Assembly: GCF_006345805.1 (NCBI RefSeq)
Contig: NW_021836126.1
Location: 62,001 to 126,000 of the forward strand
DNA: 64,000 bases
Source: Octopus sinensis
Taxonomy: Eukaryota
Direction: 5' to 3'
In this document: piece after piece, positions 3,498 through 36,129 of the stretch
Layout: each line of letters opens with the position of its first letter
How positions within the stretch are numbered: the stretch's first letter is position 1
The notes under the pieces: model-generated
What the model was told of the DNA's origin: nothing
The model's database searches: none
Seen by the model: only the letters and a program-made list of their open reading frames with translations
Translations under genes and position numbers: made by a program

Positions 3498-5990
3498 CAG
3501 TTGAACCCCTGCCTCAATAAAAGTCCGCCGCCAAATACAGAGGGTATGATAATTTATACTTTTTTAACTTTTTCTTTAAATAAAATAGCATTTAAATCAA
3601 TTGTTTATTTTATGAACTGTCATATCTTAAACCAATTGTTGAAAATATTATTTGTCATCCATGCATTTTTGGACGCATCGTATATAATTTGTATTAATTT
3701 AAAACCATTAATTCACAATCCTCAGTTCTTATATTTTAATGCATCTGGGTGATTTATACTTTCCAATAACCAAAGGTTTAACTTTTCACCTTTAGTAGAA
3801 CAGCATAAAAGAAGGATTGCTATTTTTTCTTTACAAATTTTTCTACCTAAGTAATTTTCATTTTTAGTGACAAATAATTTAATCGGCTTCTTTTTAATTA
3901 AAAGTCAGGTTTCGTTACAATTAAAAATGTCTCCCATGTTCATAAAGTCATCATACTCTTCGTAAATTTTTTTAATTAAATTTTTGTCGGAGGAATTCTT
4001 TTCACCAAAAATTGCTCTAAAACAGGCCTGGCCAACCCAAATCGCATCGCGGGCCACTTTGTCCAAATGAATCCTTTCCGCGGGCCGCATATACATGTAC
4101 ATACTAAGGATAGATATCAAAACAACACAGATAAGATTTTATTTAGTAAAATAGCATTCAGTCCAATTATACGTATCAATGAGAAATCTGTTTTTCTTTA
4201 TCTTCACTTAATTTTTTCAAATCACTTCACAATTACTAGTTGCACATCTTAATTGGTTTTCTAAGTTTTTATCTGTTAAAGAAGATCTATATCTACTTTT
4301 ACTAAACTTTAATTTCGAAAAGAATGATTCACATACGTAAGTAGATCCAAAGGAGCTTACAACTCTTTGTGCAAAAATTCTTAAGTTGGGATATTTTTCT
4401 GCAGTCACATATTTGTTATAAAAGTCAATTTTGGATATAGTAGGATAAACAAGTCTTAGTTCACTGTTGCACTGTAGGTCAATTATTTCCGTCTGCAAAG
4501 TATTTGAAACAATAGAAACGTCAACATGAAATGGAGAAGAAAATGTTTCAAACATTTTCTCATATTTTTTTAGTTCCGAGAATCGACTGTCAAATGCTGC
4601 AGCAAGATTTTTTATTTCATCAGCGTACTTGAAGAAATTTTTACAATGGCTGATTTTAAATTGATTTAGCGTTGGAAAATGTTGATCATTTCCATTTCTT
4701 ATTTGACATTCAAACAATGACAATTTCATTCGAAATGCTTTGACTTGATGGCATGCATTAGTAATCAAATTATCCTGTCCTTGTAACTCCTTGTTTAATT
4801 GATTAATTTTTTCGGTTATATCTACCAAAAAGCACAGATCTAGCATCCATTCTTCATCATTTAATTCAGTTAATGTCATTTTCTTATGCATCATAAAACT
4901 TTTGATTTCTTCTCTCAAGTCGAAAAAACGTTTTTAAACATTTTCCGCGACTCAGCCATCTGACATTGGAAAAATACACAAGATCACCATAGTGAGAATA
5001 TAACTCGTTCAATAATTCTTTAAACTTTATCTGGCAAAATGTCTTTCACGACAGCATCCAAACACTCTTTTACGAATTCTCCATCCGAAAATGATTTCAT
5101 TCTCTTTGAAATTATCATTGCAACAGAGTAAGTAGCTTGCTTTAACAGTATCAGAAGAAGAGTGTATCGATGAATTTAATAGTCTTTGCTGATTTCTCAA
5201 TTCAGATTTAAGCGAATCCAGTTTCCTTGTTTTCAATTCCTTACTAAATTTCGCGTATTCGGAATGCTTTGTTTCATAATGTCTTCTTACATTGTACTCT
5301 TTCACCACCGATACTTTCTCCTTGCAAATTAAACATGTTGGCTTGGAATTATGCATTATAAAAAAGTAATCTTCTTCCCAATGATTGCTGAATTGCCTGT
5401 TTTCTTCAAAAATTTTCCTTTTCTTCATATTGATAACAGCTACAAAAATAGATAAACTTTAAAATTTATTAAACTTATAAAATTTATCTTTATTTATTAA
5501 ACTTAAGAAAAATTTATCTTGAATGTATTTATAGGTTAACTACATACAAAATTTCTCTCGCGGGCCGCACCAAACTCCATCGCGGGCCGCATGCGGCCCG
5601 CGGGCCTTGGGTTGGCCAGCCCTGCTCTAAAAGATAGTTCATTAAGTTTTTTAAAGTGGTCTAGCTATCCATTAGAGTCTTTAAAACTGCTAAAATTTAC
5701 CCGAGTCGCGATATTTCTGGCATTTTATTTAATCTTTGTTCAGATTCGTGAAAAGTTCAAAACCAGACGATCGAGTTTTGATGATAAATCTGATTCATAG
5801 TCTTTGTATAGAACTACGTCAGTAATGGGATTTGAATCAAATCCTTGTCTAGTTTCCATTTTTATTGTAAATACTGTTCCCTTCCCAACTTTAAACATCT
5901 TGGATATTTAGCTTTCAAATATAGAGTTTGCCAATGGCACAAAATTTTTTTTCCTTAAACCACAAGAAAGTTTTTTAGCATAACCACTAA
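3498..5990 (-). mobile_element. Degenerate pogo/Tigger transposon interrupted by a hAT element
   Basis: Minus-strand remnants FKDSNG*LDHFKK (~5650), then DIFNCNET, PLVIGK..SPRC and SKNAWMT on the far side of the hAT insertion. Tigger-like end ta-cagttgaaccc at 3496. Confidence 0.7.
4023..5624 (-). mobile_element. hAT transposon (GTF2IRD2/SPIN/Charlie-like), internally deleted
   Basis: 16-bp TIRs caggcctggccaaccc / gggttggccagccctg; 8-bp TSD ctctaaaa (4015-22, 5625-32). BED-type N-terminus 5027-5428 is joined directly to the VRWLSRGK region and the dimerisation domain (FGSTYVCESFFS). Confidence 0.93.
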
Positions 5991-12110: not shown

Positions 12111-12329
12111 TTATCCAAGAGAATTTATAAACCATTTAAAGTGCCCTTAAACGGGTATATTTCAAATGAATCTTTGGAAAGAGCTTTCGGATTCCGTCGA
12201 AGACTTACCAGAACATCTTTCCACGATCATTAAAATGAGAATGCATTAATACTATTCACCCTTCCACAATTCTCCATGGAAGAATCACTACGACAAAACG
12301 AGTATTTTAAACAAAACCACTAGAAATGA

Positions 12330-14000
12330 CAAATTAGTTCACGTGGTTGTAGATGCATTATTCTCAAATATCCTTCGCCCACATCAACGAGAAGTTTTTC
12401 CACAAATTTGAATTTCAGGGCATAAAATTCATGTTTGATTGTGTCACTGGAGCACAACTCACAGGTTTCCGTGAATGTATAATGGCAGATGAAATGATCG
12501 TTTAATTTTGCTAATTTTTAAGGGACTTGGCAAAACTTTGAAATGCATTTGTCTAATTTGGACTTTAATCCTGTAGTTTATGGAAGTCTCGTGGTTGATA
12601 AAGTCGTGGTGGTAACTCCAAGCAGTCTCGTAAAAGTTTATTTTGTCATTATTTTTGACATAGAATTGAGAAAGGAGTTTAAAAAGTGGTTAGATGATAA
12701 AATTTGTGTTATGACCGCCAATGGAAATGAAAAAAACTCTATCAAGTCGATTTTGAGTGATTTGATGTTTAATTCATTTAAAGGAAGGTTTTCTGAAGAA
12801 AGAAGGTCGAATGGACCGGTTATGATCATTTCATACGAGACTTTGAGATTGCATTGCAGTCTATTGAGAAGAATTGAGTCCAGTCTATTGATTTGTGATG
12901 AAGTCTCTGATTGTTTTATTACCGCTTGGGGTCATCGACTAAAAAACAACAAAGTCAGGTTTACACAACATTGATGTGGTTGGCTATTCGAAGAAGAATT
13001 ATTCTTTCTGGGACACTGATTCAAAATGATTTTTTGGAGTATTTCTCGTTGGTTAATTTCGTCAACGAAGAGATTCTTGGTGGTTTGTATTTTCATATTA
13101 AAGGATTGTGTTTGGAATTTAAGAAAAAGTTTGAAAATCCAATTTTTCGAGGACGGGATTTAGACATTACTGAAAGTCAAAGATTAAAGGGAGATCAAAA
13201 ACTGGCTGAACTGATCTCTATAGTGAATCTTTACATAATTCGAAGGACAAGCAGTTCCCTCTCACATTATTTTCCTATGAAAAGTCCAATGAGCTTTGTT
13301 TTATGTTTAAGGAGAATACGTGGTCTGTTGTGCTCTTACAAATCAGCAAATACAGTTATATTCCTCATTATTGAATGATCGAGAATTGGATTTGTTGGTT
13401 TTGATTTCTTCTTTAAAGAAGTTGTGCAATCGTAAGGTTGGTTGGGCCAATTTAAATTCTGCCTTGAAGGGACTGTGGATAGCGATAGTTCTGGTTTGTT
13501 GCTGCATTTAAGATAAAGGCAAGTTCAGAGTGTTAGATTGCCTGTTGAGAATAGTAAAATCATTGAGAATAATAAAAGCGGTCTAAGCTTGTTGGTGAGT
13601 TTAGTAATTCTTCTGTACTTGTTGTGTAAGTATGGTAAAATATATTTGTCTTCATGTTGAGTAGAAAGGCCGGGGACTGTGAATATTACAGAGACAGGCT
13701 CATAAGAAGGCATTAAGTGATTGTGTGGTCGACCAAGAGGACGCTGAGAGACATTTTAGTTTGGATGATTTTCGTGAAATATCAACCCCTCTCTCGGACT
13801 CATTTAGATACACGCACGACAAGTGGGATGATTATTCAGTGGTTTAGACTTAATTGTCGGATATATGTGGGTGGAATTCAACATACTCCGCCGTGTGAGG
13901 ACAGTAATTGTGCTTCTGATCTGTCTAATTAATATCATTGCAGTGATCCAAGGAATGTTTTTGATGTTGTTCTTCAAAGGGTTTTCTCTACACTCAAGGA
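12330..14000 (+). pseudogene. RAD54: RAD54 pseudogene, internally deleted
   Basis: LRPHQREGIKFMFDCVTG, CIMADEM|GLGKTL, LLICDE|GHRLKN, SGTLIQNDFLEYFSLVNF, SLKKLCN, QRQAHKKALSDCVVDQEDAERHFSLDD. Has frameshifts, stops and decayed splice sites; most of the second RecA lobe is missing. Confidence 0.85.
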
Positions 14001-14640: not shown

Positions 14641-16545
14641 GATGTTTTTTTAATTACCCTTTTACATCTGAATTGTCAAGTAAATTCCTCAATCAATTCA
14701 AAGACGTACCAAAATTGGATTCCCAGGGACAGACCAGTCACAATAAATAATTTCATCTTACGTGGGCATTCGAGAAACTTAATCTTTTGGACGAATGAGC
14801 ACCCCGAACTGGATTACGTTATCGGGGACTACTTGGAGACACATTCCCCATCCTCCAAAAAAGTGTACATTCAGTAAATGAAAGCACTCACCCATAAAAC
14901 AGTGAATTCATGGCTGAACTTATTCTCGAGGCGTTCTAAGTGGGCGTAAAATACATTAGAATGCAGGCACTGATGTCACTGTTTGCCTCTTGGGCTAAAA
15001 GTGCTGTGAACGACAGACCAACCACTGGAATTGTGATCGACTCCGTAATGTACTAACAAAGTGTGTTTATTGAATTTTCAACTACGCTAAGAGTGCAATT
15101 GCAGGGTTATTAGGCAATTCGCCGGGCTTTAGCAATGTTACTGCTTTTGTTTGCACTACTCACATTTGCAGAATGTGAAAATAATCAGAGTATACATATT
15201 TATTTACTTTGAGATTATCTAGAGTCCAGTTCCATTGGGGAGGGTATAGATAAATATTTTTATATTAGGTGATAACACAAGAACTATCTCTGATGACGAA
15301 TCAGGTATATTGTTTGGTCATTTAAGAATTCTACGACCCACTTTCAAATGGGAATGACTGGCTACGAATTGGACTAAATTAACAATTCTAACTCACATAA
15401 TATAATTATAACTCACCTAACTCTTAAACAATCGAAATGATGATAAAGAGTACTCCTGTAGTATCATCTCTTCTTTCCGAGAAAATGATTTGAAAACTTA
15501 AGGAGTGACTAAATTTCAGGAAAAAACAAAATCGGTGATCATCATAGCAACTAGGGCTTACTTAAGCAGGATTGATCACTCAGTATCTAAGTACCCGTTG
15601 TGTTACTTGGAGACAAGTCTTACAATTACATTTTATTCATACAAATATCAATAACAACATATAATTAAACGTGGTCAACTTCTTTACCAGGAATGTAACG
15701 TTTTAATTACCTTCAGATGAGCTTATCATCATGAGAGCCCCAATCTCCAGCCGAGGATTAGAAAAAGCTCTTTCAGAAAAACTATCACTTTTTTAAGTCA
15801 TTTCCTGTCGAATTTGTATGTGTCGCTCCGACCACGCTCTTTTTCATTTGAAGAACTTTTTACTAATCCCAAAAATAATTTACCTTCTCTTTTCACTATT
15901 TTGGTATTGACCTGAGATTGTCTTTTGGCCATAGACAATGCTGTTGTGGATTTTTTCTGATCGATCTTAAATACTAAGTTCGTGTGTAGTATTCCGGTTC
16001 TTACAAGTCTGCGTGTCGCTTTGTAGGAAATAGGGTCCTCTCCTGTAAAGACCTGGCCTTTGTATGTGATCTATTTTCTCTTTCTTTATCTACGGATTTT
16101 GTAGCTCTGTTATTTTTCACTCACTTGAACACGCTGGGCTTACGGAATGTTCAGAAGCGTTAGAGTCATGGAGTTGCGTCGGCTACTCAGTGTTTGAAAA
16201 GACCTCATTTCAAAAAAAGTTGGGACGAATTTTTAGATCTTTTTAAAGAAATGCGATTCAATCCTGACCTGCTCGAGCTGGCATCACTAGGCGCCACTTT
16301 CGAGCCACACTTTCTTAATGTCGGTAATTACTTAATTTTTTCATCCGGGCTTTTACCTTGGCAGAAATCAGTTTGACTTAAGGTTTTGAATAAAGATTTT
16401 ACATAAAAACCTAGTTTTGGCGTGAGTGCATGAATTTTTTTGCCTGTGAAAATTTTTTAAAAATTCATATCTTAAAAAAATGCATTTTCCATCCATTCGA
16501 TTTTTCAAACCTTGTAAAGTTCAAAGCAATTTTCATATCTTATGA

Positions 16546-18707
16546 CAGTGGTTCTCAAACTTTTTTTCCTTGCGTACCCCTTGCCATCTAAATAATTTTT
16601 CGCGTACCCCTTATCGATTTTTAAAAAATTAAGGAAAAAAAATATTTAATTAATGAGATGGATGGTGTTGTTTATCAATCACTAATCTATCGATTTCTGG
16701 ATCCTTTGACGAAAGACACACCCGAATATCATGAACAACATTCAGCCTCGCACGATGAACTGATTTTAAATTAAACAACGATGAAAATCCTTGTTCGCAG
16801 AGATATGTAGTCGGAAACAAAAGCAAAAAATCGATTATATAAAATCCAATATTGTGATATTTTGATGTCATTTTACACCAAAATTCAATTAATGGTGCAG
16901 ATTCAAATAAGATTTTTGACTCGTAAGAATTTATTAATTCAATAACTTCTTCTTGAATATTTGAAGGCAAAACATTAACTTTTACGGAAAAAGGATTGAC
17001 AAAAAACTTAAGATCTACTTCATTAATTTCAGGTATATATTTTTCAATTTCATTCTTCAATCCAAGTAAATGGGAAGTTATTTGATGTTTTAAATTTTCT
17101 ATTTCATTTAATTTTAGATGGAAAATGTTTTCATTCAACTTATCAAACATAGTAAAATTAGAATTTGTTGTATTATCTATCCACAGTTGGAGCTTCATAC
17201 GAAAAGACCTACAATATTGCATTATTTCGTAAAAAACCTTGTTTTTTCTAAAAAGTCAACAATGGTAACTCCCTTAGTTTGTACCGATAAATTCAAAGCA
17301 TTAATTCGCGAAAAAATGTCCGTTAAATAAGATAGCATTACACCCCAATACATATTTGATAACTTTGATAAATATAAATTTTTATTTTCGCGAAGAAAAT
17401 ATTCATAAATTTCATTCTTCAAACTGTGCACTCTGGAAAGAACATTTCCTTTGGATAACCATCGAACTTCTGTGTGATATAGTAAAACCTTCTCATCTGA
17501 ACCAAATTCTTCACAAATTGAATAAAAAATTCGCGAATTTAAAGGACTTTTTTTGATATGATTGACAATTTTAATAACATCGTCAAGAACATTTTAAGTT
17601 CAAGAGGCATTGTCTTCACAGCAAGAACATAACGATGCAACATACAGTGAAGATGTTTTACATTTGGATTGACAGATTGTACTCTACCTCGGAAACCAGA
17701 GTTACATCCAAGCATAGCTGGTGCTCCATCTGTGGTGCATGCACTAAGATTTTGCCACAATAGGCCTATCATAAGTAAAAAATCAAAAATGTACCTTCTG
17801 TTTCAAAAAAACAATTAACTGCATCGAAAATATCAGAACCTTTTGTGTTTAAAGGTAAGGAATAGTTGAACAAAAATTCTTCCTTAATATTTTCCATATA
17901 AATATATCGCACATAAACGAGTAACTGAGAGCAATTTGCTACATCTGTTGATTCATCCAATTGAATTGAAAATTTTTTAAAGGCAGCACTTTTTATTTCA
18001 GTAATGACCTAATAATAATTAACTAGAAAATAACTTGTTCTTTTATGTTTTCGGATAGATCTCGTATTCTTCTATTGACGGTATCATTTGAACATGGAAT
18101 TTTTCGAACAATATGCTCCAATTTATTGCCAGGGAAACATTCAAACATGTCCTTAATGCACGGTATAATAAGATTCTCGGCAATTGTATGTGGTTTTTTG
18201 GCTTTTGCGATCCGATATGAAATCATGTAAGAGAGTTTTGATAGTAAAAAATTAATGTCAAAATTGAAAGAATCGTCTATTTTCCGAATATTATCTTTTT
18301 TGTTCTTAAAAAAGTCATTTGGTTTTCCGATAGTTTCGAAATGATTAGAAACTTGATGCCGAGAAAGTAATGAAGGTTTCATGGATTCAGGGCAAAGAAT
18401 CTTTTGGCAAATAATACACTGCGGATGTGGCACACCGTTTTTAATCACAAAATAAAATCCATAGTTGAGATAACTATCGTTGTATTTTCGAATCTTGTTA
18501 ACAGGTAAACTCATAAGAAAAACTAGTAGCGTGGAGATTTATTTTATTATTAATTATTTAATTTAATTATGATTTTTATTATAATTAGAATTAATAACTT
18601 TTTATGTTGAAACGAAAATTAAATAGATTTTCAAAAAATTTTCGCGTACCCCCTACAGAATTTCGCGTACCCCTAGGGGTACGCGTACCCCAGTTTGAGA
18701 ACCACTG
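16546..18707 (-). mobile_element. hAT Buster/Charlie (ZBED5/ZBED8-like) transposon, full length, three introns
   Basis: Perfect 15-bp TIR cagtggttctcaaac; 8-bp TSD tcttatga (16538-45, 18708-15). Transposase 18514->16650 (MKPSLL.RH, LDESTD, CTTDGAPAM, HTEVRWLSKG, TTYLCEQGFS). Introns at 18009-34, 17766-94 and 17209-37; one -1 frameshift at 17592-95. Confidence 0.95.
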
Positions 18708-19151
18708 TCTTATGACAATGTAAGAACAATTAAAATTACCAATTTTTTAAATAAAAGCTCCAGTCACCAAACAAAAGAGAAATAAATTATTTATTAGGTT
18801 TTTATTCAAAAAGAATTGTTCATTTTGGGTAGAGATCATATAATGTGTTCCAAAAAATAAAGTGTTCCAAACATAAGATTCATTTTAAATCAAAGTCCGG
18901 TTGTCCGTCTCTAACAAGCTTTCTGCGCTTATATTTTGAATATTCATAATTGATGGCATAAGCTGCCATTAAGCCTAAACTTTCTGAATTATCTATCTAT
19001 CCTTTCGGAAAATTTACTCTGTTCAATATCCAGATTGAACTTTTGCTACTAAGGAACCGGTAATCAATCTAAACGCTAACTTATATATTGAGGATCTGGC
19101 CACCGCAGTTGACTCAATTAGGAAACATATTTCTCCTCATCTAGAGAAATA

Positions 19152-24073: not shown

Positions 24074-25960
24074 GAAAAGATACAAAGTCTCTGTTGGATG
24101 TTTACAGGAGACAAAACTGCATGGGGGATTAGAAGAGGAACTGTCGGGCTATCACTTCATCTAATTCCGAAGTGAATGCAGACACTTTGGCCGAGGATTT
24201 GTAATAAAGAAGGAATTGAAACCAATGGTTCATCTCTTTTGGAGCATAAATGATCGGATTTGTGTACCTCAGATCAGCATGAATAAGCTTTTCCTATCTA
24301 AAAGCTTACTATCCATTATAATCGTATACGCACTCCACAGTGGATGGATTGAAAATGACCCTACTAAGATAGACTTGTTCCACTCTTGCCTGTCTGAAGC
24401 TTATTCTGAACTTGTTCACTCGTCAACAACTATCATTGCTGGCGACCTTAACGCCAAAGTGGGATTACGAAGAAACCTTCATGGAAAAACACGGGAGGGG
24501 AATAAGGAACGTGGCAGGAACATTACTTGCCGATAACTATAGGAAATGCCTTGATACGTATTTGGGAAGTGTGGAAACAAACCAACCATTCTTCAAACTT
24601 GGGGGACAAATCCAGGAATCAATAAAAGGAGCAGCGGAGAAACAGCTCATGGACACAGAAATGGTTACCACATCACCAAATGGAACAACTGAGATATTCT
24701 TCTTGTGAATAAACAAAATATCTATTTGGCTACAATATTTAAATACGGAGGACAAGCATATCAAAGAAAAAAGTGGTCGGAAAAGATCGAATATTAAGAA
24801 GAAGATCAAGAAGTGGTGTCCTATATGTCAAGGAAGGAGGCTGAGATACAGATCAAGGCCATGGAAGTCTTGAAATGTATTATGAGGCGATCAGATTATT
24901 ACGAGGACGTAAACACAGACAACCACTAATCATAAATGACAGACGAATTGCAGATTCCGCAGAATTAGCAGAACTAATCTCCGGCCACTTCGATAAACTG
25001 TTGTTCCACCATTTAAATGTTCAAAAATGCGACATACATTCTTGGCTACTCGATTAATTGTCAGAAATTAATGGAAGTCCTCGCAGGATTCCTTGATGAA
25101 TCTTCTATCCGGATGATCAGAGCACTCTTATCAGAAACCTATCTGTCGGTCAGGGTACGAGACAAGTGCTCTAAACCATTTGAAACAACATCTGAAACAC
25201 CTCAAGGGGATCCGTTATACTGTTTGTCATATATCTGGAAGCTGCATTGAGAGAATTAAAACCATACTATAAAGGAAAGATCAATGTGGTGGCATACGCG
25301 GATGACGTGGATTTTATTCCTTCCGACAGGGACGCTCTGGAAAGTCTACTGGAAATGATGCCAAACAGACGAACAAGACGTGATTATGCGAAAAACACAT
25401 GCAAACAGTGCACTACACAGCTTAAAGGAAAATTGGCTAAAACGCAAAAGACTCAGCATAAAAACACGGATACGACTATACAATTCACTAGTGAAGCCTA
25501 TACTCCTATATAACGCCGGAACTTGGGAACCTTCCGCTACAGACAATGACAACCTAGACTCTTTCCATAGAGATCACCTCCGACGTACTCTAGCCTCCAA
25601 GTGGCATTCAAGGCTGAGTAGCAGAACAGTTTCATCAAGCAAACAAATCTCGATCGAAATTACCGAATCCAGATGGAGGCTGTTTGGACACATTCTAAGG
25701 ATGGATTTGGACACCGGAAAACGCCGCTATGGAGGACTATTTCGAAGCTGGGGGCCATCGTTTCCGTGGACGACCAAAAAATACTCTCTCGAGTACGCTG
25801 GATAGAGACCTAAAGAGGGCTGGTAGAGAATTGAAGAACGAGGACGATCTCGATGCACTACGGGACGTCGCCAAGATCGCGGGAAATGGAATAAACTAAT
25901 TACTCGTATTGTTTCCTGTGCTGCACAAGCTTTGTCATGATCCATAGCATCGCAAAAGTG
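24074..25960 (+). mobile_element. Degenerate RTE-clade LINE (copy A)
   Basis: APE motifs CLQETK and IIAGDLNAKVG; RT motifs PQGDPL and AYADD; C-terminal KPILLYNAGTW and WRLFGHILR. Many deletions. Confidence 0.85.
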
Positions 25961-26002
25961 CCTATAATAATTATTATCGCCCCCGGGTTGAAAACACCTA
26001 CT

Positions 26003-26051
26003 CTATACCATATCTGAAACCGTAGACCCATCACTATGGATCACCGAAGCT
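26003..26051 (+). other. 5S rRNA-like 5' fragment (also at 45442-45490)
   Basis: ctataccatatctgaaac...gatcaccgaagct resembles 5S CCATACCAC.TTGAA...GATCACCGAAGT. Confidence 0.35.
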
Positions 26052-26935
26052 TGTTAGCGCCTATTCTGCACATAATCCGCCTCAAAAATATATTTGAAAT
26101 GGAAAAATTCTGATATCCGTCATTTTTTAATTCTAATATCCGCCACAAATAATCAAAGGTTATTTAATCAACTCTAGAAATTTTGACGTTAATGGTGTTA
26201 TTTGATTAAATGAATAAGTAAGACTCATTTTTAGCAAATGTGAGAGACTTTACTGTATAGCGTTTTCCCAGCTTTAAAGTAGAAAGCATAAACAGTAGTG
26301 TTAACCCTTCAAACATTATTATTTCCGACGAAATTTTATGGAAAATGATTCCATATTTATTCATCTCTGCAAAAACAAATGTTTCTGCTATTTACTGGAG
26401 GCACTGTCTAATAAGGCGAGTTTTCAAAATTGGCTCTTCCATTTTTCACACGCGCACAAACTGGAAATATTTTTTGCTTAGTTCAATAGTAGTGTCAATA
26501 TTTTGCCTCGTCAGTATTTTCACAATTTGTTTTACTGTGTGGTGAAAGTCTTAGACACCTGTTAATAGTACTATCCGATATTCAGAAAACATCATGTTTT
26601 TTAACTTTGATTTGTCAGTAATAGACTAAACTAAGAATTTATTGCTTGTATAAATCATTCAATTTGAAAAAATAATCATTTTCTCAATTGACAAAGTATT
26701 CGGCTTATGGAGATTGAGGCATATTTAATAGTCATTTATTTCTTTTTAGATTTTCTACTAATAGAGCGTTCAACAATCAGTTTTTTGACTGCAAGAAATA
26801 TAGTATTTCTTTTTCGTCGATTAATAGCTCTTACTCTAACACACAATTTCCCACATAACATCAATGCCTGCTTATATTTAGAGCTTTGACAGTAATATTT
26901 CTCAACAACAACCCAGAAATAAACAAGAAAAAGAA

Positions 26936-27648
26936 TTATCGATTATTTTTACCAGCCCGTTCAATTTCATCCCTACGTTTGACAGCATATGAATTGGTAG
27001 TGTTCTAGGGGATGGTGAGAAGAGTGACCTTGTAGGCATTGATGACCTCATCGGCGTAGCACTCCACGATTGTCTTCTGACTTCGGAAGGCTGCCTTCCT
27101 GGCACCCACAGCAATGTTATAAATGGCCTGATTCACTCGGCGGAGAGGGGACACGTCCACCGACTGTCTCCTCACACTCCCCTTCCTCCCGATCCTCGTC
27201 GAGTCCTCTCTCGGCCCGCAGTTCTCGATTGCCACAACCAGCACTTTCACCGGGTTCTATCCTTTAAACACATTTTGGACTTCGTTGAGGAGGAGGTTGA
27301 TTATCTCCAAGGCATGTTCCACGATTTTCATGGCTTTGAGCTTCTTTCCGTTATTCCTTCCGTGTCTCATCAGAGAACAAACACACCGCTCCACGATGAA
27401 GCAACTCGCCTTCCGGAATTTCTTGACTTGGTATCTGCCTGCACTGTGGGGGACGAAGGTCTCCAATAATTTGATGTATGGCTGGGTTTACACACCACAA
27501 TCAACCATCAAATGAATCTCCACTTTTACTTCATTCACGTCCCATTTACCAAACAACTTTACACGTGTGTCCTTGGGGGACTCGACCAACATTTCTGTTT
27601 GAGTATTCTCAATGTCTGCCTATTTGTGTTACTTAAATGCACCACCAT
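26936..27648 (-). CDS. RPS5: 40S ribosomal protein S5 (uS7), copy A
   Basis: M|ADIE..KLFGKW..|PHSAGRY..GRNNGKK..|[28 protein letters not shown]..|[15 protein letters not shown]. Four introns of 26, 24, 24 and 24 nt. Confidence 0.97.
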
Positions 27649-28317
27649 AACTCAGATACTATCACGTGAATATTTATTAATTGTTTTAAATGTATTTATT
27701 AAAACTTGTCATAAATAATTAAATAATACACGACTTCTTTGTCGTTTAATTTTTTTGAGATTGCGATTCGAAATTGGTGGTTGGTTTTCATCGTTTCGAA
27801 ATGATCTGCTATTAGTTCGTCTTATAGATTGAAGACTTTTAGAACTTCTGCTTTTACCGACGGGGTTTAAAATCTTGCATTTTTATTGCGGGACTCAATT
27901 TTTCAGGGGAAGTTTTGATGGCTGTTCTTTCTATTCGCAGTTTGAACTTTAGTTAATAACTTTTTGGATTTCCAATTTTTGTTTTCCTAAGATAATCCAT
28001 TGCATCTAGTTTTTATTTAATATGGAGAATGATGGAAATAGAGTCGTAACTAACTTGGAGACAGAGGATCAAAAAATGGTGTTGGTTACTTCCTACTCTA
28101 AAAGGAGTAGATTAACCTCTAGCGGACAAGGTCGGATTAACATCAATTAAATAATACTAACTTTACTATTTTACTTTTTCTTTTCTGATAAAATGATGAG
28201 TTTAATGTTAATCCTTTAATTTTTAAAGTTTTCCTGATTGTTATTACTTGTATAATCAAATTCCAAAAACAAAATTTGATGGTAGGTAGATAAATAACTA
28301 AGAAGATAGTTGAGAAC

Positions 28318-28420
28318 CTAACGGTCACTCAACGGTCACACCCATCAGATCTAAGCGGTCGGACTCGTTTGGCAAGATAACAGTCCTCGGATGGGTGACC
28401 CTTTCTCCGATGTGTCTAAG
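28318..28420 (+). other. Degenerate 5S rRNA-derived sequence (pseudogene or SINE3 head), copy A
   Basis: cccatcagatc-taagc (box A-like) and cagtcctcggatgggtgacc (box C-like) in 5S order. Too decayed to call a functional 5S gene. Confidence 0.55.
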
Positions 28421-29188
28421 TAATTCACACAAATAAAGTTAATGGCAATTTGGAATCCCCTTGTGCAAGTTTGCCTTTAATTCTGATTGATGGATGTAAC
28501 ACTGATTAGAGATAAGAAATGTAACAAGGAAATATCCGAATAAATAATTAGGTTAGTTAAATAGTGGAATTTGAATATTTGATTAAACTCCATCATTTCC
28601 GCATATCATATTTATTGAGGAATAAGAACAGGAGTTGCAATCTATTGTGAGTAAACTAACCCACCATTTGCTTGCTCAAATATTACTGTTGCCTCGTGAA
28701 ATTCACTTGCTTCTATTTGCAATCTCTTTTCTGTAAATATGTTGGGAAGCGTAAACACCACAGTTGACGTTTTCGAAATCCTTATATGAGAATATTTAAC
28801 TATATATTATGGGTTCAGACTTTTCTGTGAATATGCACATTTTCTGCGTTACATCAATACTACACAGTAAATAATTTAAAATACTAAATTTTTAGCTCAC
28901 GACTGAGTTCCGAAAATTTAATGTCTTGGACACAAATCTACAGCCCTTTCTAATACTATTAAAGTGAGAGTAGACCAATAAAAAACGGTATATATATATC
29001 AACTGTCCTTCCCAGAGCCATGTCGGATACCCATCGGTCAGAACAGAATTCAATCAAATTGCTTACTGAGAAGTATAAATTTATGCAAATATTTTGTTTT
29101 CCTACCAACTTTACTTAAATTAACAAAATAGATAATTTCTTAAAGTCAATTATTCATATAAATAAAATATAAAAGCGTTTGTTGTGAT

Positions 29189-29916
29189 ATGGAGGACATT
29201 GATTTGCGTTTGGAAATACTGTCAAAATCGGAACTCTACGACGGTATATATGCATAAATAGCAGAAATGTACGACACGGTGATAGAAATGTTGGGGAGAG
29301 ACATAACCCCCACAGCAAAACAGCGAAATTACATATCGACGGCCTTCAAACACAAAATATCAGGTCCTCGGCAGTCGTGCAAGTCTTTGGGGTATTTGAA
29401 AGTGGAGGGGAAGGAGAAATACCGGCAGAGTGTATTGATAAACATGGAGGAGTAGTTGGTGGAGGAAATGAGGGACATTAGCTCGTGTGAGTTGAGTGTG
29501 ATGAAGGATCTGATGAGCAAGTCGACGGACGAGCACTCCCTCGTGTTCTATTTGAAGCAGTTGGTGTGTTTGTGGATGGCAGAGTGGGGGACTGTTGTCG
29601 GTACATGGCCGAGGTGTTGGAGGAGGACGAGCGGGAGACGTACGTGAGGGAGTCCCAACAGGCCTACGAACGGGCTTTGCACGTGTCCAAGGACTTTGCT
29701 GCCACTGACACGGCTAGGCTGGGACTGGCCTTGAATGCGTCCGTGTTCTATTTTGAGATTGTGGGGGATAGGGAGAAGGCGTGTGAGTTGGCCAAGGTCA
29801 CTTTCGACCAGGCCATTTGCTCGTTGGACTCCACCAACGGCATTATTGACCCAGACGTGGCACTCATTGTACAACTCATTCGAGACAACCACAAACACTG
29901 GAATTCACGTCCCTGA
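29189..29916 (+). CDS. Divergent 14-3-3 protein, paralog 1, copy A
   Basis: MEDIDL..SELYD|EMYD..STAFKHKISGPRQS..|..VFYLKQ|VGDCCRYMAE..RLGLALNASVFYFE..LIVQLIRDNHKHW. Introns of 21, 24 and 23 nt. Confidence 0.9.
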
Positions 29917-30229
29917 CTTTTTCCTTTATTTTAATATTTCTACTGTGGTTAACCTAATAGTTGTATTTGTAAAATAGGTATTATATAAATTGTTTCCTAA
30001 GTATAATTATTAAATAAAATCTCCAACTGATTGAACTTTTTTTTGACTGTAATGTATCAGCTTGTTCAGATTTTTCTAAAAATTCCATTAGCTCTTCATT
30101 TTCAGTATATTCGTAATCAACAAATTCACTATAAGATATTGGATCGTCAATTTGAAATTTCTTAATTATTTCTTCATAATTATTTTCGTAGTTCTTAGAT
30201 TCACTGTTGATTGTGATTGTTTCACATTT

Positions 30230-30950
30230 TATCCATTGTGCATGACGGAAACAATTTTTAATGGCCGTAGGAGTAACTTTATTCCAAGCGAAGAATGTTA
30301 ATGTCGCAGCAGTTTCAAGGGTGATTGCATTTATTGAATTCTGATAATTTTCCCCTGCCCCAACCTTTTCGATTATATCATTTAAAGTATTTTATAATTC
30401 CTTGATCCATTGGTTGCAAGACAGGAAGTTCTAAGAGGCAAAACAAGAATTTCGATTGAGTTTAACGTGACAATAACTTGATGAGATGGGCATTGATCTA
30501 TTGCAAGTAGAATTTTTCTTTTTTTCTTCACAAGTTCACAATCAAAATCATTAAGCCACTTGTTAAGAATTTCACGGTTCATCCATGCCTTAGTGGAATG
30601 GGTGTAGGTAACATATTTTCTAATGTTGAAATTTTTAAAACACCTCGGACTTTTAAATCTTCCTATCAATACAGGCCTTCTCTTATCGGAACCAGAACAA
30701 ATTGCGCATAATAGTAAAGAAAATCGATCGACAACCTTATTCCAGACTTTAATTTAGTGCACACACTTTTAGAAGGAATCGCCTTGTAAAAACACCAGTT
30801 TCATATGCATTATAAACATTGTCCAATCCATATTGTTCAATTTTTAAACTGATTGTTTCATTAAAATCAGCAATAGATTTTTCATCATGATTTACTGATC
30901 CACTGTCTCCGTGAAATTTTCTTAACTTGATACCATTTCGTAATGTTAAT
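30230..30950 (-). mobile_element. pogo/Tigger DDE_1 remnant (also at ~51470-52160)
   Basis: FHGDSGSV..NVYNAYETG, IGRFKSPRCFK..KAWMN..RKILLAIDQCPSH. Lies between the two 14-3-3 genes in both copies. Confidence 0.8.
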
Positions 30951-31110
30951 TAATTTAACTTACAATTAAATAAAAAATTATTTTTCATAATACTTGAGGA
31001 GCGGGTAATATTTTCACTGTGGGTAACCTAATTGTATTTGTAACAAATAAATATTTTTACTGTGGGCAACCAAATAATTGAATTGGTAATAAAATAGATT
31101 GTTAGTGTGA

Positions 31111-31895
31111 ATGAATATTGACGAACTGAACCTGAGACTAGAAGTGTTAGCAAAGGCGGAGTTATACGACTGTAATAAGCAAGCCTGACTGTTAGACATG
31201 TACGACATTGTGATCGAACTGCTGAGTCTAAACATAATCCCCACTCCTAAGCAGAGGAACTACATGTCCGTGGCCTTCAAACACAGAATATCAGCCCTAC
31301 GACAGTCGTGCAAGGCCATGAACAGCCTGTGCAGAAACTACGGAGTGGAGGAAGACAAGGAGGGCATGGAGTGCGTCCACAAATACACCAAATTGGTACT
31401 CCTCCACCCGCAGGCCAGATTCAGGACGAAATGGAGTCCATTTGCAACACACAGATCGGCATCATCAAAGACTTAATAAAGAAATGTGACCAAGATCAAT
31501 CACTTGTGTTTTATTTAAAGCAGTTAATTAATTAATTATTTATTTTTAGATTGGGGGACTGTGGACGATACATGGCCGAGGTCCTCTCGACGGATGCCCG
31601 CCAATACTACGTGGACGAGTCCAAGGAGGCATACGAACAAGCCCTGTCCATCGCCCAAAACTTTGCTGTGAACGACACTGGGCGACTTGGCCTGGCTCTC
31701 AACGCCTCGGTCTTTTACTACGAAATACTGGAGGAGAAGGACAAGGCCTGCAGTCTGGCCAAAATGACCTTCGATGAGGCCATTGAGTCCTTGGACGATT
31801 TGACTGGGTTTTTGAATTCGGAGGTGTCTTTGATCCTTCAACTGATTCAAGACAATTACAAAAACTGGACTGACAAGAAGGATGGGTGGAAATAA
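31111..31895 (+). CDS. Divergent 14-3-3 protein, paralog 2, copy A
   Basis: MNIDEL..AELYD|YMYD..SVAFKHRISALRQS..VFYLKQ|LGDCGRYMAE..RLGLALNASVFYYE..LQLIQDNYKNW. Same three intron positions as paralog 1. Confidence 0.9.
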
Positions 31896-31964
31896 TATTT
31901 TGGTTAATTAATTTCCTATTATTAGTAATAATTAATTAATAAACCAAATAAAATAAAGTGAGTG

Positions 31965-34834
31965 ATGAGGTCTGGTGGGTCAGTAGTGGCAGAATACGGC
32001 AAGCTGATAGAGGGGCACCCGTGGAAAGTGATATGGCTGAGCATAATATGGACAGCGTCAGTGCTGATGTGGAAGCAGGAAGGGAGGGTGTGTGAGGTGA
32101 GTGAGTGTAATGAGGAATAGGTGTTGGAGAGTGAAATGATATCAATAGTGGTGGTGAAGATGTTGGCAGTGTTGAACGTATACATAGAATTGGGGCGTGT
32201 GAGTGGGCACAAGTTACTAATGGGTGTGATAGTGTGATGAGGGGCAGGGTTCGTGATAATCTGCACATTCCTGACGGCCTTCACATTCACGAGTGTGGTA
32301 GTGATGGGGACACAAGTGCATTCAATGGCATTCTACATGGTGTTGGTGGACATGTCCAGGCCGTGTGAGTTGGTGGAGTATGCAATGCGGGAGGGGAGTG
32401 TGGTGGGGGCACTCAGTCGGGTGGGGCCAGCCATGGTCAAGACTGCGTTGGTGGAGGCGGGGGTGATCGGGTCGGGCATGTTGGTGGGTGTGGAGATGTG
32501 TCTGTTTGGGGCAGTCCTCGTCATTGTTAACTGCATTGCCTTCCTCACCTTCTTTCCCAGTTGTCTCGCCATTTCACGACTTTCTCTTTTTCTTGTACAC
32601 TCACTCCATTCACACACAGTCCATTCTCGTCCTCTTCGCCAGTCAGTACGACCACTTTACTCCACATTCACCACCCATCTTTACTCTCCCTCTCCTCCTC
32701 CTCATACTACTCCTCGCTCTCATTCCCACACCTACCAAGGGGAGGTCAGGGGAGTCACTGCTCACTGGGGGGAGACTACTAATGGACATCCGCCCTCCTA
32801 CTGAGGACACACCAATGGACTTGGCCTCTACTAAGGACTCACTACTGACTGAGGATACACCAATGGACTCCCCTTGTACTAAGGACTCACCACTAATGGT
32901 ATACCCCTCTTTACTCACAACATAGTCTCCTACTAGTGAGGATTCACTACTGACTGGGGACACTCCATTAATGGCCTCTTCTCCTACTAAGGACACACCA
33001 ATGGACTTATTCTCTACTAAGGAGTCACCACTGACTGAGGGCACTCCACTGACTGAGGATACACCAGTGGACTATACCGAGGACACTCCACTAATGGTAT
33101 CCCTCTCTCCTACTTACAACATAGTCCTCTCCTACTAAGGATACACCAATGGACTACCCTTCTACTGAGGACTCACTACTGTCTGGAGACATTCCACTAA
33201 TGGACATCCGCTCTCCTACTGAGGACACCAAGGACTCCCCTTCTACTGAGGGAACACTTATTGAGGACTCACCATTAATGGTATCCCCCTCTTCTACTCA
33301 CAACATAGTCCCCTACTACTGAGGGAACACTACTGACAGGGGACATACCACTAATGGACATCCGCCCTCCTACTGAGGACACCGAGGACTCATCTTCTAC
33401 CAAGGACACTCCACTAATGGTATCCCCCTCTTCTACTTACAACATAGTCCCCTTCTACTGAGGACATACTAGTAACCGAAGGCACACCAGTCAGTGAGGA
33501 CACACCACGAATGGACTACCCTACCAAGGACACTCCACTGACGGATGAGGAGTGGCTGAGTGTGTTGGGGAGTGGGGGATTGTCAGTGCACAGACTGGAG
33601 AGTGTGTTGTGTGAGTACGAGCGGGCAATCCGAGTGCGGAGGGGGCACTTATTGGGGAGGAGGGGTGAGGGAATCCCGTATGAGAAGTACGGTCATTACG
33701 ACAAAGTGGAGGGGGCGTGTTGTGAGAATGTGATTGGCTTCATTCCTGTCCCTCTCGGAGTGTGTGGGCCTCTTCTCCTCGACGGCAGGGAATATATGGT
33801 CCCTTTGGCTACCACCGAGGGATGTCTGGTGGCCAGTGTCAATAGAGGGTGTCGGGCACTCTACTTGGCCGGGGGGGTCACTGCTGTCCTCACCGCCGAT
33901 GGCATGACTCGCGCCCCCGTCCTCAGGATGCAGTCCGTCCACCAAGCCCACCAATTGAAGGAGTGGATTGACGCACATTTCCCTACTATCAAACACATCT
34001 TCGACGGGGGCAGTCGCTTTGCCAGACTCCACACCATTCACTCCACACAGGCCGGCCGCTTGCTCTACCTTCGCTTTACTGCCACCACTGGAGATGCCAT
34101 GGGAATGAACATGGTCTCCAAGTGTGCAGAGACTGTCCTCACTTTCCTCACACAACACTTCCCACACATCCAAGTCATCAGTCTGTCTGGCAATTTCTGC
34201 TCTGACAAAAAGCCGGGGGCCATCAACTGGTATTATGTGCCATCACTCCCCACAGGGTACAAGGCAGGGGCAAGTCCGTGGTATGTGAGGCCACTATTCC
34301 TGCCTCCGTCGTGTCCTCTGTTCTCAAGACCACCGTCCAGAGCCTGGTCGACGTCAACATGTCCAAGAATTTGGTTGGGTCTGCCATGGCCGGGTCGATT
34401 GGAGGGTTTAATGCCCACGCAGCCAATGTGGTGACTGCTCTCTTCATTGCCACGGGACAAGACCCCGCACAGAACGTGGGGTCCTCCAATTGTATCACTT
34501 TGCTCGAGTTTGGTGGCCAGTCTGGTGGGGATTTGCTGGTGAGTTGTTCAATGCCTTCCATCGAGTGCGGCACAGTCGGAGGTGGCACTGTCCTCCCCCC
34601 ACAAAAAGCCTGTCTTGAGGTTCTCGCCTTTTATATTGCCAGTTGTTGGGGGTGGCGGGAGCGCATAGTTCGAGTTATGGGGGGAATGCACGTGAATTGG
34701 CCAGAGTTGTGTGTGCCACTGTCATGGCCGGGGAACTGTCCTTGTTGGCCGCCCTTTCATCTGGCCATCTTGTGGCAGGGCATATGCGCTACAATCGATC
34801 TCAAGCTAATATAAATACTGCCAATCATTACTAA
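31965..34834 (+). CDS. HMGCR: HMG-CoA reductase (class I, membrane-bound), copy A, reading frame intact after splicing
   Basis: N-terminal HPWKVI; sterol-sensing domain ([26 protein letters not shown]); T/E/D/P repeat linker; catalytic [62 protein letters not shown]. Nine introns of 23-28 nt. Confidence 0.97.
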
Positions 34835-35568
34835 TTATTTATTTTGTCTAACCCTCCTCTGTTTACCTTCGATATACATAAATCCTCAATATTTTTCAAG
34901 ACAGGAACTTTTTTTTCCGCGAGCTTGATTTGCAGCGTCCGCCCATTTGGCGATGCAAAGGAATGGTGACATTACAGAACTGAAATACGAGTTGATATTA
35001 TTATTCCTACCGAATAAAAAATCCAATATAACAAGGCGGATTTATACGACAAAAAATCAAACCAGATATGGCTAATAGAGAAGCAGTTAAAGTTGAAAAA
35101 CACATAAATATAATTTTGTGGCAAATGAATTTTAAATAATTTACAAATTCAAAATATTTCCGATTGTCATTACCTGGGATGCGATCGCCTTCAAGTATTA
35201 TAAAATATATATGGATTGGCATTAAAGACAATGTTGTGTAGTACATCCAAACAATTGCATTAAAGAAGACATTATAAAGTATGTTCGTAGAATATAGTTT
35301 GAACCGTAATTACTAAAGCATTGATTCTCAACAAAAATTAGACAGTGTGGAACACTCATCCAAATGGAAATAATTAAAGGATGAGAAAACATGAGGTGAC
35401 AGAAAACGAATACTCTAAAGAAGAGCATATGGATGTCCCGGTATAGGGAGGACCAGTAAATTAAAAATTCAACTAATCTAATTTTTAATTTCTTTGTTTA
35501 AATACAAAAAGTAGTAATTTAAATTGTAAAAATCTAATAAATATATATTTAATTGATATTGCAAGAGT

Positions 35569-36060: not shown

Positions 36061-36129
36061 ATATTTTTTTTTTAATTAAAAATAAATTTTTTTTAATTTG
36101 GTGTCTTGTGGATATACTTTGCTAGACTA

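What the first reader, a model, noticed from the sequence alone, without database searches (positions are those of the whole stretch)
16546..18707. Buster/Charlie hAT transposase carrying three host-type micro-introns, one base from intact
The four apparent ORF fragments join into one transposase once 26-, 29- and 29-nt GT-AG introns are removed (EQ|VITEIK, ETEG|LLWQN, KTR|SFRMKL). Only a -1 slip in a 4-nt homopolymer remains. TIRs and TSD are perfect, so the copy is young. Animal Buster/Charlie transposases are usually described as intronless, so these introns suggest long residence in, and adaptation to, this genome's minimal splicing. Splicing could also control transposase output (inference).
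Basis: partly seen in the sequence, partly recalled or inferred. Interest (0 to 1): 0.75.

Follow-up and report, generated by a model that had tools for sequence, protein, structure and literature searches.

The report
Mobile hAT transposon with three micro-introns
A young cut-and-paste transposon of the hAT/Buster family carries three 26-29-base introns in its transposase gene that its relatives lack. These introns match the ultra-short introns of the surrounding genome, which is probably a dicyemid parasite's DNA filed inside an octopus assembly.

Summary
Window 16546-18707 is a 2,162-bp hAT/Buster element with perfect 16-bp inverted ends, a perfect 8-bp target duplication (TCTTATGA) and six subterminal GGGGTACGCG motifs. 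Removing three GT..AG segments (26, 29 and 29 nt) and adding one base in an A4 run gives a 593-aa protein. It aligns gap-free at every junction with ~595-aa ZBED5/ZBED8/FAM200-like transposases (best 51% identity), and its model matches Hermes transposase.

Five relatives checked at DNA level are single uninterrupted ORFs, so the introns are derived. Housekeeping genes in the window (HMG-CoA reductase, a RAD54-like gene) have clean 23-26-nt GT..AG introns, so "host-type" holds.

The contig is deposited as Octopus sinensis, but its micro-introns and the lack of cephalopod-like homologues point to a dicyemid, a kidney parasite of that octopus with ~26-27-nt introns.

A second copy on another contig is an internal-deletion derivative with its own target duplication. 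It differs by one substitution and five 1-nt indels over 796 aligned nt and retains intron 1. So the introns travel with the element and mobilisation was recent.

Splicing was not tested with RNA. Whether the 1-nt slip is real or a consensus error is open. "Long residence" and regulatory splicing remain inference. It is a new variant of a known kind, of moderate interest.

The parts
16538..16545 (.). Target-site duplication, left copy (TCTTATGA; fits the Buster pattern nnnTAnnn)
   Evidence: consensus from PMC3517528
16546..16561 (+). Terminal inverted repeat at the 3' end of the element in gene orientation, CAGTGGTTCTCAAACT
16571..16610 (-). Two subterminal GGGGTACGC(G/A) motifs (16571-16580 and 16601-16610), putative transposase-binding sites
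   Evidence: six matches in the window, all inside the element ends, against 0.35 expected
16650..17208 (-). Exon 4 (SFRMKL...QHHPSH plus the TAA stop at 16650-16652). It holds the catalytic E546 and the C-terminal region that aligns with the hAT dimerisation domain of homologues.
17209..17237 (-). Intron 3: 29 nt, GT..AG, phase 2, 24% GC, flanked by AAG|..|GTC
17238..17765 (-). Exon 3 (LLWQN...LEKTR). It holds D244 (TDGAP) and the RW334 motif, and it contains the 1-nt frame slip.
17592..17595 (-). A4 run where one base is missing relative to the reading frame (LELK-x-VLDD). It may be a real mutation or a consensus error.
   Evidence: error question
17766..17794 (-). Intron 2: 29 nt, GT..AG, phase 1, 21% GC, flanked by AAG|..|GCC
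17795..18008 (-). Exon 2 (VITEIK...FFETEG), which holds D178 (DESTD)
18009..18034 (-). Intron 1: 26 nt, GT..AG, phase 0, 15% GC. It is also present, as 25 nt, in the deletion-derivative copy L002.
18035..18514 (-). Exon 1 (ATG at 18512-18514), encoding the BED-type zinc finger C33/C36/H53/H58. If intron 1 is retained, the product is the 163-aa protein that RefSeq annotates.
18643..18691 (.). Four subterminal GGGGTACGCG motifs, one pair of which forms the palindrome GGGGTACGCGTACCCC
18692..18707 (-). Terminal inverted repeat at the 5' end of the element in gene orientation
18708..18715 (.). Target-site duplication, right copy (TCTTATGA)
34230..34255 (+). Comparator, not part of the element: host HMG-CoA reductase intron of 26 nt, GT..AG. 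Its duplicate lies at 55032-55057.
34620..34642 (+). Comparator: host HMG-CoA reductase intron of 23 nt, GT..AG. Its duplicate lies at 55422-55444.
12394..12418 (+). Comparator: RAD54-like gene intron of 25 nt, GT..AG (LRPHQRE|GIKFMFDC)

Best explanation
This is a class II cut-and-paste transposon of the hAT superfamily, Buster/Charlie group. It is 2,162 bp long and lies in a genome whose spliceosome handles introns of about 23-30 nt.

Its transposase gene has four exons. The transcript must lose three micro-introns (26, 29 and 29 nt, in phases 0, 1 and 2) to encode the 593-aa enzyme. That enzyme has an N-terminal BED-type zinc finger, an RNase-H-like DDE core (D178, D244, E546) with a helical insertion domain, and a C-terminal hAT region. 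By analogy with other hAT elements (inferred), it would bind the 16-bp inverted ends and the subterminal GGGGTACGCG repeats, excise the element and reinsert it with an 8-bp duplication at nnnTAnnn sites.

Relatives lack these introns, so they were gained on the lineage leading to this element after it entered a micro-intron genome. In that genome only GT, AG and a suitable length seem to be required, so a short insertion in a coding region can be neutralised by splicing. The introns are part of the element's DNA and are copied when it moves.

The genome is most likely a dicyemid (Dicyema) from the octopus kidney, co-assembled with Octopus sinensis.

Shown here: the anatomy, the colinearity with homologues, host-type intron size and ends, intronless relatives, and a second recent insertion that carries intron 1. 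Inferred: actual splicing, intron gain within dicyemids, and the mechanism of gain.
For: - Anatomy and frames.
- Homology: gap-free alignment at all three junctions and at the slip with 12 and then 47 full-length homologues, with the zinc-finger, DDE and W residues invariant.
- Fold: AlphaFold2 model with pLDDT 85.6 and pTM 0.76. The 12 best PDB matches are all Hermes hAT transposase (E 1.7e-9 to 2.4e-7, probability 1.0).
- Target duplications: TCTTATGA here, ATTTAGAG in L002 and CTGTAGAG in relative L004 all fit the Buster nnnTAnnn pattern (PMC3517528).
- Host genes in the window: HMG-CoA reductase has 26- and 23-nt GT..AG introns, and splicing them gives a clean catalytic-domain ORF. The RAD54-like gene has a 25-nt intron.
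- Literature on Dicyema introns: 26.2 +/- 1.9 nt from genomic/cDNA comparison (PMC2222250); median 27 nt (PMC6543705); splice signals reduced to 'GTa' and 'AG' (PMC13644364).
- Relatives P0001, P0007, P0018, P0085 and P0069 are uninterrupted ORFs whose gene length equals 3 x (aa + 1). P0001 and P0007 lie between related inverted ends.
- Second copy L002:5677-6544 has both ends, its own target duplication and a 1,288-bp internal deletion with TTTA microhomology. It differs by 1 substitution and 5 one-nt indels in 796 nt, and it contains intron 1.
- Source: the contig is VCDQ01001570.1 of the O. sinensis assembly GCA_006345805.1. The HMG-CoA reductase has no homologue above 56% identity other than its own RefSeq 'LOW QUALITY PROTEIN' model. 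D. japonicum lives in O. sinensis, with a genome of 36.7% GC and 49% repeats (PMC6736024).
Against: - No RNA data could be examined, so splicing is unproven.
- As assembled, the gene still has a 1-nt frameshift, so this copy may be dead.
- Only one full-length copy and one deletion derivative were seen, so the state of introns 2 and 3 in other copies is unknown.
- The nearest relatives are only 51% identical. An intron-bearing sublineage outside dicyemids therefore cannot be excluded.
- Pfam gave no significant hit on the joined protein itself.
- Assignment to a dicyemid rests on intron size, the source animal and the lack of cephalopod-like homologues. No match to a Dicyema reference was possible, because none is in the searchable collections.
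Confidence: 0.8

Rival explanations
1. The introns are ancestral to a Buster sublineage. On this view they were longer elsewhere, were inherited by this element, and shrank to host size in the micro-intron genome. They would not have been gained there.
For: hAT transposases with several host-sized introns exist. One example is BuT2, which has five exons and introns of 58-154 nt (PMC3942097). The closest relative found is only 51% identical, so a large unsampled gap remains.
Against: All five relatives examined at DNA level, from four different sources or phyla, are intronless. More than 100 full-length hits of about 595 aa come largely from short contigs, and the two that were checked at DNA level (P0001, P0007) are single continuous ORFs.
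Confidence: 0.08
2. The element is a decaying pseudogene. The three segments would then be ordinary insertion mutations that merely resemble introns, and nothing is spliced.
For: The gene has a frameshift as assembled. Other transposons in the window also carry 1-nt frameshifts.
Against: - Three insertions that each have GT..AG ends, host-intron length and lower GC than the exons have a chance probability of about 4e-7.
- Apart from these segments and one base, 1,781 nt of coding sequence have no stop and keep every invariant family residue.
- The ends and the target duplication are perfect.
- A sister copy with 1 substitution in 796 nt shows recent mobilisation.
Confidence: 0.05
3. The segments are removed at the DNA level. 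They would be small eliminated sequences, as in ciliates, or the contig would come from a ciliate renal parasite rather than a dicyemid. They would not be removed by RNA splicing.
For: Eliminated sequences of 26-30 bp are typical of Paramecium (my own knowledge). Circular DNAs were reported in a Dicyema assembly (PMC6543705).
Against: The boundaries are GT..AG, not TA..TA. Host genes in the window carry the same kind of segment. TAA is used as the stop exactly at the conserved C-terminus, and 593 + 439 codons hold no in-frame TAA or TAG. That argues against a ciliate with a reassigned code.
Confidence: 0.02
4. The region is genuine octopus DNA, and the micro-introns are an annotation illusion.
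For: The record is deposited and RefSeq-annotated as Octopus sinensis.
Against: - Gene models with 23-26-nt introns fall outside the intron range known for animals other than dicyemids and myxobolid myxozoans (PMC13644364).
- NCBI flagged the HMG-CoA reductase model as low quality.
- No cephalopod orthologue appears among the hits, and the next best hit is 52-56% identical.
Confidence: 0.05

Closest known systems
Autonomous hAT-Buster/Charlie elements, the source of ZBED5, ZBED8, FAM200 and SCAND3-like proteins. Relatives found here: P0001 in L003 and P0007 in L004.
   Same: The ends begin CAGTGGTTCTCAA (L004: CAGTGGTTCTCAACCT). The target duplication is 8 bp with central TA. The transposase is about 595 aa with the same zinc-finger, DDE and W residues. 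The elements are about 2.2-2.6 kb long.
   Different: The relatives have a single uninterrupted ORF. This element has four exons separated by introns shorter than 30 nt, AT-rich coding sequence (31% GC), and at most 51% protein identity to any relative found.
BuT2 of Drosophila buzzatii (hAT, Tip family) (PMC3942097)
   Same: It is a hAT element whose transposase gene is split by several short introns of the size typical for its host, and it has internal-deletion derivatives.
   Different: It belongs to a different hAT family. Its introns are 58-154 nt rather than 26-29 nt. Its gene structure was predicted by gene finders, and its intron positions were not compared here.
Ac/Ds of maize and the P element of Drosophila (my own knowledge, not tested here)
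   Same: Ac has an intron-containing transposase and gives rise to Ds-type internal-deletion derivatives, like the L002 copy. The P element uses retention of one intron to make a truncated repressor. That is the model for the idea that retaining intron 1 here yields a 163-aa zinc-finger-only protein.
   Different: No evidence of regulated splicing exists here. The families and intron sizes differ.
Spliceosomal micro-introns of dicyemid host genes (PMC2222250, PMC6543705, PMC13644364)
   Same: Lengths are 23-29 nt, the ends are GT..AG, and there is no extended splice-site consensus and no polypyrimidine tract.
   Different: The published cases are introns of cellular genes, many at anciently conserved positions. 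The introns here sit in a mobile element at positions that are intron-free in all relatives checked.

Membership tests
hAT superfamily transposon | 8-bp target-site duplication | tested here: met
   TCTTATGA flanks the window copy and ATTTAGAG flanks the L002 copy.
hAT superfamily transposon | Short terminal inverted repeats (5-27 bp) | tested here: met
   The 16-bp repeats match 16/16 and are the only exact matches in the window. The range is from PMC3517528.
hAT superfamily transposon | Transposase with a Hermes-like RNase-H DDE fold and a helical insertion domain | tested here: met
   The model has pLDDT 85.6. The 12 best PDB matches are all Hermes transposase, with E down to 1.7e-9 and TM about 0.5. 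D178, D244, E546 and W334 are invariant in 48 sequences. Their assignment as catalytic residues is by analogy.
hAT superfamily transposon | C-terminal hAT dimerisation domain (Pfam PF05699) | tested here: inconclusive
   The joined protein gets no Pfam hit. Homologue P0001 scores 27.6 bits against a cut-off of 21.4 over the aligned region, and the C-terminus aligns without gaps.
hAT superfamily transposon | N-terminal BED-type zinc finger | tested here: met
   C33-x2-C36...H53-x4-H58 is conserved: C36, H53 and H58 are invariant and C33 is at least 90% conserved. Pfam zf-BED is not significant even in P0001, so this rests on the motif alone.
Buster family of hAT | Target-site consensus nnnTAnnn | tested here: met
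   Both insertions of this element fit (2 of 2), as does relative L004. The consensus is from PMC3517528. The sample is small.
Buster family of hAT | Transposase groups with Buster-derived proteins (ZBED5, ZBED8, FAM200, SCAND3-like) | tested here: met
   All named best hits are of this kind, at 40-51% identity over 99% of the length. No phylogenetic tree was built.
Spliceosomal intron of the dicyemid micro-intron type | GT..AG ends and a length within the host range | tested here: met
   The element's introns are 26, 29 and 29 nt. Host introns in the window are 23, 25 and 26 nt. Published values are 26.2 +/- 1.9 nt and a median of 27 nt.
Spliceosomal intron of the dicyemid micro-intron type | Removal restores the frame and gives colinearity with homologues | tested here: met
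   There is no gap at any of the three junctions in 13- and 48-sequence alignments.
Spliceosomal intron of the dicyemid micro-intron type | Removed from RNA (junction reads or cDNA) | not testable with these tools
   No RNA-seq access was available. No spliced full-length protein is in the protein collection, where the best hit is 51% identical.
Autonomous (active) element | Uninterrupted reading frame after splicing | tested here: not met
   One base is missing in the A4 run at 17592-17595. This could be a consensus error. The sister copy differs mostly by 1-nt indels, but the duplicated segments of the window show few such indels.
Autonomous (active) element | Evidence of recent mobilisation | tested here: met
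   A second insertion with a different target duplication shows 1 substitution in 796 nt.
Dicyemid genome (source of the contig) | Housekeeping genes with introns shorter than 30 nt | tested here: met
   Seen in HMG-CoA reductase and the RAD54-like gene. Among animals only dicyemids and myxobolid myxozoans show this.
Dicyemid genome (source of the contig) | Sequence match to a Dicyema reference genome or transcriptome | not testable with these tools
   No Dicyema assembly is in the searchable collections. The HMG-CoA reductase search returned none.

The most novel reading that the evidence does not exclude
The element may be a datable case of new intron creation in an animal. Three introns would have arisen inside a still-mobile DNA transposon after it entered the dicyemid lineage. 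A plausible route is capture of short DNA during double-strand-break repair. The element's own excision and gap repair make such breaks frequent, and the 2-4-nt direct repeats (AGGT..AGGT) that overlap the splice sites fit that model.

If so, in a genome where GT, AG and length suffice, coding regions could gain micro-introns easily, and transposon copies could be used to time the gains.

Two further readings are not excluded:
- Retention of intron 1 would give a 163-aa zinc-finger-only protein that might damp transposition, as the P-element repressor does.
- The second copy may lie in true octopus DNA, which would mean very recent parasite-host transfer.
Probability: 0.3. Interest if true: 0.75.

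Novelty: new variant of a known kind. Interest (0 to 1): 0.55.

Why it matters
How new spliceosomal introns arise is an old open question, and clear recent gains in animals are rare. This case offers three introns in a mobile gene whose relatives lack them, in the animal lineage with some of the shortest introns known. Copies of the element in dicyemid genomes could show the order and timing of the gains. RNA data could show how efficiently such minimal introns are removed.

It also matters practically. At least one contig of 388 kb in the RefSeq-annotated Octopus sinensis assembly appears to be parasite DNA. Some 'octopus' proteins are then probably dicyemid proteins, mis-modelled because the annotation pipeline did not recognise micro-introns.

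Tried and rejected
- Pfam on the joined protein gave nothing significant. The local Pfam copy appears to lack the newer FAM200/ZBED5 models that are precomputed for the homologues.
- Sequence search of PDB with the protein and with a 13-sequence profile found no Hermes match. Only the fold comparison found it.
- A third protein search used exon 1 and exon 4 joined, and was meant to reveal near-identical fragments of other copies. It did not even return the known 127-aa sister protein, so it says nothing about copy number.
- The cluster look-up found only one sister protein.
- A metagenome scan with the 26-nt terminus found one contig, L009. It holds an unrelated 246-bp miniature element with the same ends and no transposase.
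- Test for intron origin by duplication of flanking exon sequence, or from a repeated element: no significant similarity. The best was intron 3 against upstream exon, p about 0.012 before correcting for six tests. No other copies of the intron sequences occur in the window.
- Other transposons in the window were checked for micro-introns. The Tc1/mariner copy and the DUF659-hAT copy have 1-nt homopolymer frameshifts instead, so micro-introns are not a general feature of transposons here.
- The 'assembly riddled with homopolymer errors' idea was only partly supported. The two Buster copies differ mainly by 1-nt indels. The duplicated window segments differ mainly by substitutions, and HMG-CoA reductase is frame-clean.
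- Programmed ribosomal frameshifting at the A4 run was considered and dropped, because there is no slippery heptamer in frame (read directly from the sequence).
- The tRNA and Rfam scans of the window found nothing that could identify the organism.
- The origin of the L002 contig (dicyemid or octopus) could not be settled. Its flanks hold only reverse-transcriptase ORFs.
Full report
**What is there**

Window 16546-18707 is a compact 2,162-bp element. Both ends read CAGTGGTTCTCAAACT, matching 16/16 in inverted orientation, and these are the only exact matches in the 64-kb window. The 8 bases outside each end are identical (TCTTATGA at 16538-16545 and 18708-18715). The motif GGGGTACGCG occurs six times in the window, all within 100 nt of the element's ends, against 0.35 expected by chance. 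This is the layout of subterminal transposase-binding repeats in hAT elements; that role is inferred.

**The gene**

On the minus strand an ATG at 18514 opens a 163-codon ORF, and further ORF pieces follow in other frames. Three segments interrupt the coding sequence: 18009-18034 (26 nt), 17766-17794 (29 nt) and 17209-17237 (29 nt). Each begins GT and ends AG. Removing them joins the pieces into one frame except for one missing base in an A4 run at 17592-17595.

With one residue allowed at that point, the 593-aa product matches more than 100 full-length proteins of about 595 aa. These hits are named zinc finger BED domain-containing protein 5-like, ZBED8-like, FAM200 or SCAN domain-containing 3-like. 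Identity is 40-51% over 99% of the length. Alignments with 12 and then 47 of them show no gap at any of the three junctions or at the slip. The zinc-finger residues (C33, C36, H53, H58), D178, D244, E546 and W334 are invariant or nearly so.

Pfam and PDB sequence searches were uninformative. An AlphaFold2 model (pLDDT 85.6, pTM 0.76) has Hermes hAT transposase as its 12 best PDB matches, with E from 1.7e-9 to 2.4e-7.

**Are the segments more than chance?**

- Each segment can be placed in only 3-5 ways that give the same product, and exactly one placement is GT-AG.
- With the element's dinucleotide frequencies, all three being GT-AG by chance is about 4e-7.
- None of the three lengths is a multiple of three, and each brings a stop within a few codons if retained.
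- Their GC is 15-24%, against 31% for the exons.

**Are they of host type?**

The window holds two copies of an HMG-CoA reductase gene. Homologues map to it in three collinear blocks separated by 26 nt (34230-34255) and 23 nt (34620-34642). Both gaps are GT..AG, and splicing them gives a clean catalytic-domain reading frame. A RAD54-like gene has a 25-nt GT..AG intron at 12394-12418. So the surrounding genome does use introns of this size.

**Whose genome is it?**

The exon-1 ORF is on record only on contig VCDQ01001570.1 (388 kb) of the Octopus sinensis assembly GCA_006345805.1. The window corresponds to record positions 62001-126000.

The reductase matches only its own RefSeq model, flagged 'LOW QUALITY PROTEIN', at 100%. 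The next hits are 52-56% identical, come from plants, ticks and unnamed sources, and include no cephalopod.

Among animals, introns under 30 nt are known only in dicyemids and myxobolid myxozoans (PMC13644364). Dicyema japonicum lives in the kidneys of O. sinensis. Its genome is 36.7% GC and 49% repeats (PMC6736024), like this window. Dicyema introns measure 26.2 +/- 1.9 nt by genomic/cDNA comparison (PMC2222250) and have a median of 27 nt (PMC6543705). Their signals are reduced to 'GTa' and 'AG' (PMC13644364).

The standard genetic code is in use: TAA stops the transposase at the conserved C-terminus, and there are no in-frame stops. That argues against a ciliate renal parasite. I conclude that the contig is most probably dicyemid DNA co-assembled with the octopus. 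This is an inference, because no Dicyema reference could be searched.

**Are the introns derived?**

Five relatives were read at the DNA level. In every case the gene length equals three times (residues + 1), so there are no introns.

| Protein | Locus or source | ORF length |
|---|---|---|
| P0001 | L003 | 1,797 nt |
| P0007 | L004 | 1,698 nt |
| P0018 | Pycnogonum (sea spider) | 1,785 nt |
| P0085 | Oopsacas (sponge) | 1,788 nt |
| P0069 | Trichinella (nematode) | 1,776 nt |

P0001 and P0007 lie between related inverted ends. L004 has CAGTGGTTCTCAACCT with the target duplication CTGTAGAG. The nearest of these is only 51% identical, which is a caveat.

**Do the introns travel with the element?**

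A 127-aa RefSeq protein clusters with the exon-1 ORF. It lies on another contig, VCDQ01008158.1.

- Positions L002:5677-6544 hold an 868-bp copy with both ends and its own target duplication, ATTTAGAG.
- The copy has a 1,288-bp internal deletion joined at a TTTA microhomology.
- It differs from the window copy by 1 substitution and 5 one-base indels over 796 nt.
- It contains intron 1, which is 25 nt there.

This is a Ds-like derivative of an intron-bearing master. It shows that the family moved recently and that intron 1 predates that movement. All three target duplications fit the Buster pattern nnnTAnnn (PMC3517528).

As assembled, one base is missing in an A4 run. The two Buster copies differ mostly by 1-nt indels. 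The Tc1/mariner copy, the DUF659-hAT copy and the RAD54-like gene also have 1-nt shifts, the first two in homopolymer runs. That pattern is typical of long-read consensus errors. However, the duplicated parts of the window differ mainly by substitutions, and the reductase is frame-clean. I cannot decide the point; a read pile-up would.

**Mechanism and limits**

The best explanation is an ordinary Buster-type cut-and-paste element whose transposase mRNA must be spliced three times by the host's minimal-intron machinery. The introns would have been gained after entry into that genome.

How they arose is open. They are not duplicates of flanking exon sequence or copies of a repeat in the window. 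The 2-4-nt direct repeats that overlap the splice sites (AG|GT..AG|GT) fit capture of DNA during break repair (PMC3020277). They are equally what a splice-site preference alone would produce.

Retention of intron 1 would give the 163-aa zinc-finger-only protein that RefSeq annotates. A repressor role for that protein, as for the P element, is speculation.

Introns in hAT transposase genes are already known, for example the five exons of BuT2 (PMC3942097). The kind is therefore not new. The new elements are the Buster family, the sub-30-nt size and the evidence of gain. I found no paper on dicyemid transposons with introns.

**Verdict**

'Long residence' and regulatory splicing remain untested. 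This is a new variant of a known kind and of moderate interest. The likely mislabelling of parasite contigs in an octopus reference genome is a useful by-product.

Noticed in passing
whole window (= VCDQ01001570.1:62001-126000 of GCA_006345805.1): The contig is deposited and RefSeq-annotated as Octopus sinensis, yet it has 23-26-nt introns and no cephalopod-like homologues. It is probably dicyemid parasite DNA. RefSeq 'octopus' proteins such as the LOW QUALITY HMG-CoA reductase-like model (P0121) and the window's own 163-aa exon-1 ORF (P0241) would then be mislabelled and mis-modelled. XP_029655914.1 (P0242, annotated SCAN domain-containing protein 3-like) lies on a second contig whose origin, dicyemid or octopus, is undetermined.
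   Followed up: partly
window 24074-38150 and 43491-58935 (also 41882-42840 and 62864-64000): A segmental duplication of about 15 kb at roughly 20-kb spacing, 95.5-99.5% identical, includes the whole HMG-CoA reductase gene with both micro-introns. It may be real or an assembly artefact; this is undecided.
   Followed up: partly
window 2145-3184 (-): A Tc1/mariner transposase (HTH plus DDE_3 domains) is split by a single-base shift in an A6 run (SQK|NIISR). It has no intron.
   Followed up: yes
window about 4220-5458 (-): A second, internally deleted Buster/GTF2IRD2-like hAT copy. Its N-terminal zinc-finger part is joined to the C-terminal part, which has a Dimer_Tnp_hAT hit. Its ends were not mapped.
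   Followed up: partly
window 38422-39811 (+): A third hAT-like ORF (DUF659) has a 1-nt shift in a G run inside its BED finger (RMR|QHHLLC). The ORF ends at 39811 and the C-terminal hAT region was not found. An A/T-rich palindromic repeat block follows at about 39815-39920.
   Followed up: partly
window 12250-13900 (+): The RAD54-like helicase gene has one clean 25-nt intron but also some oddities. A 27-nt in-frame segment splits the DEGH box and ends GG rather than AG (12903-12929). A segment after MADEM has no GT at the expected place. A frame change follows the GKT motif. These may reflect non-canonical splice sites, sequence errors or a pseudogene.
   Followed up: partly
L002:5677-6544 (VCDQ01008158.1): A deletion-derivative copy of the element lies between two reverse-transcriptase ORFs. 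Whether this 203-kb contig is dicyemid or octopus DNA could not be determined. If it is octopus, this would be very recent parasite-host transfer.
   Followed up: partly
L009:2029-2274 (JGI metagenome contig JGI24022J15233_10096860): A 246-bp miniature element bounded by the same CAGTGGTTCTCAAAC ends and sharing the first 26 nt of the terminus. It is otherwise unrelated.
   Followed up: yes
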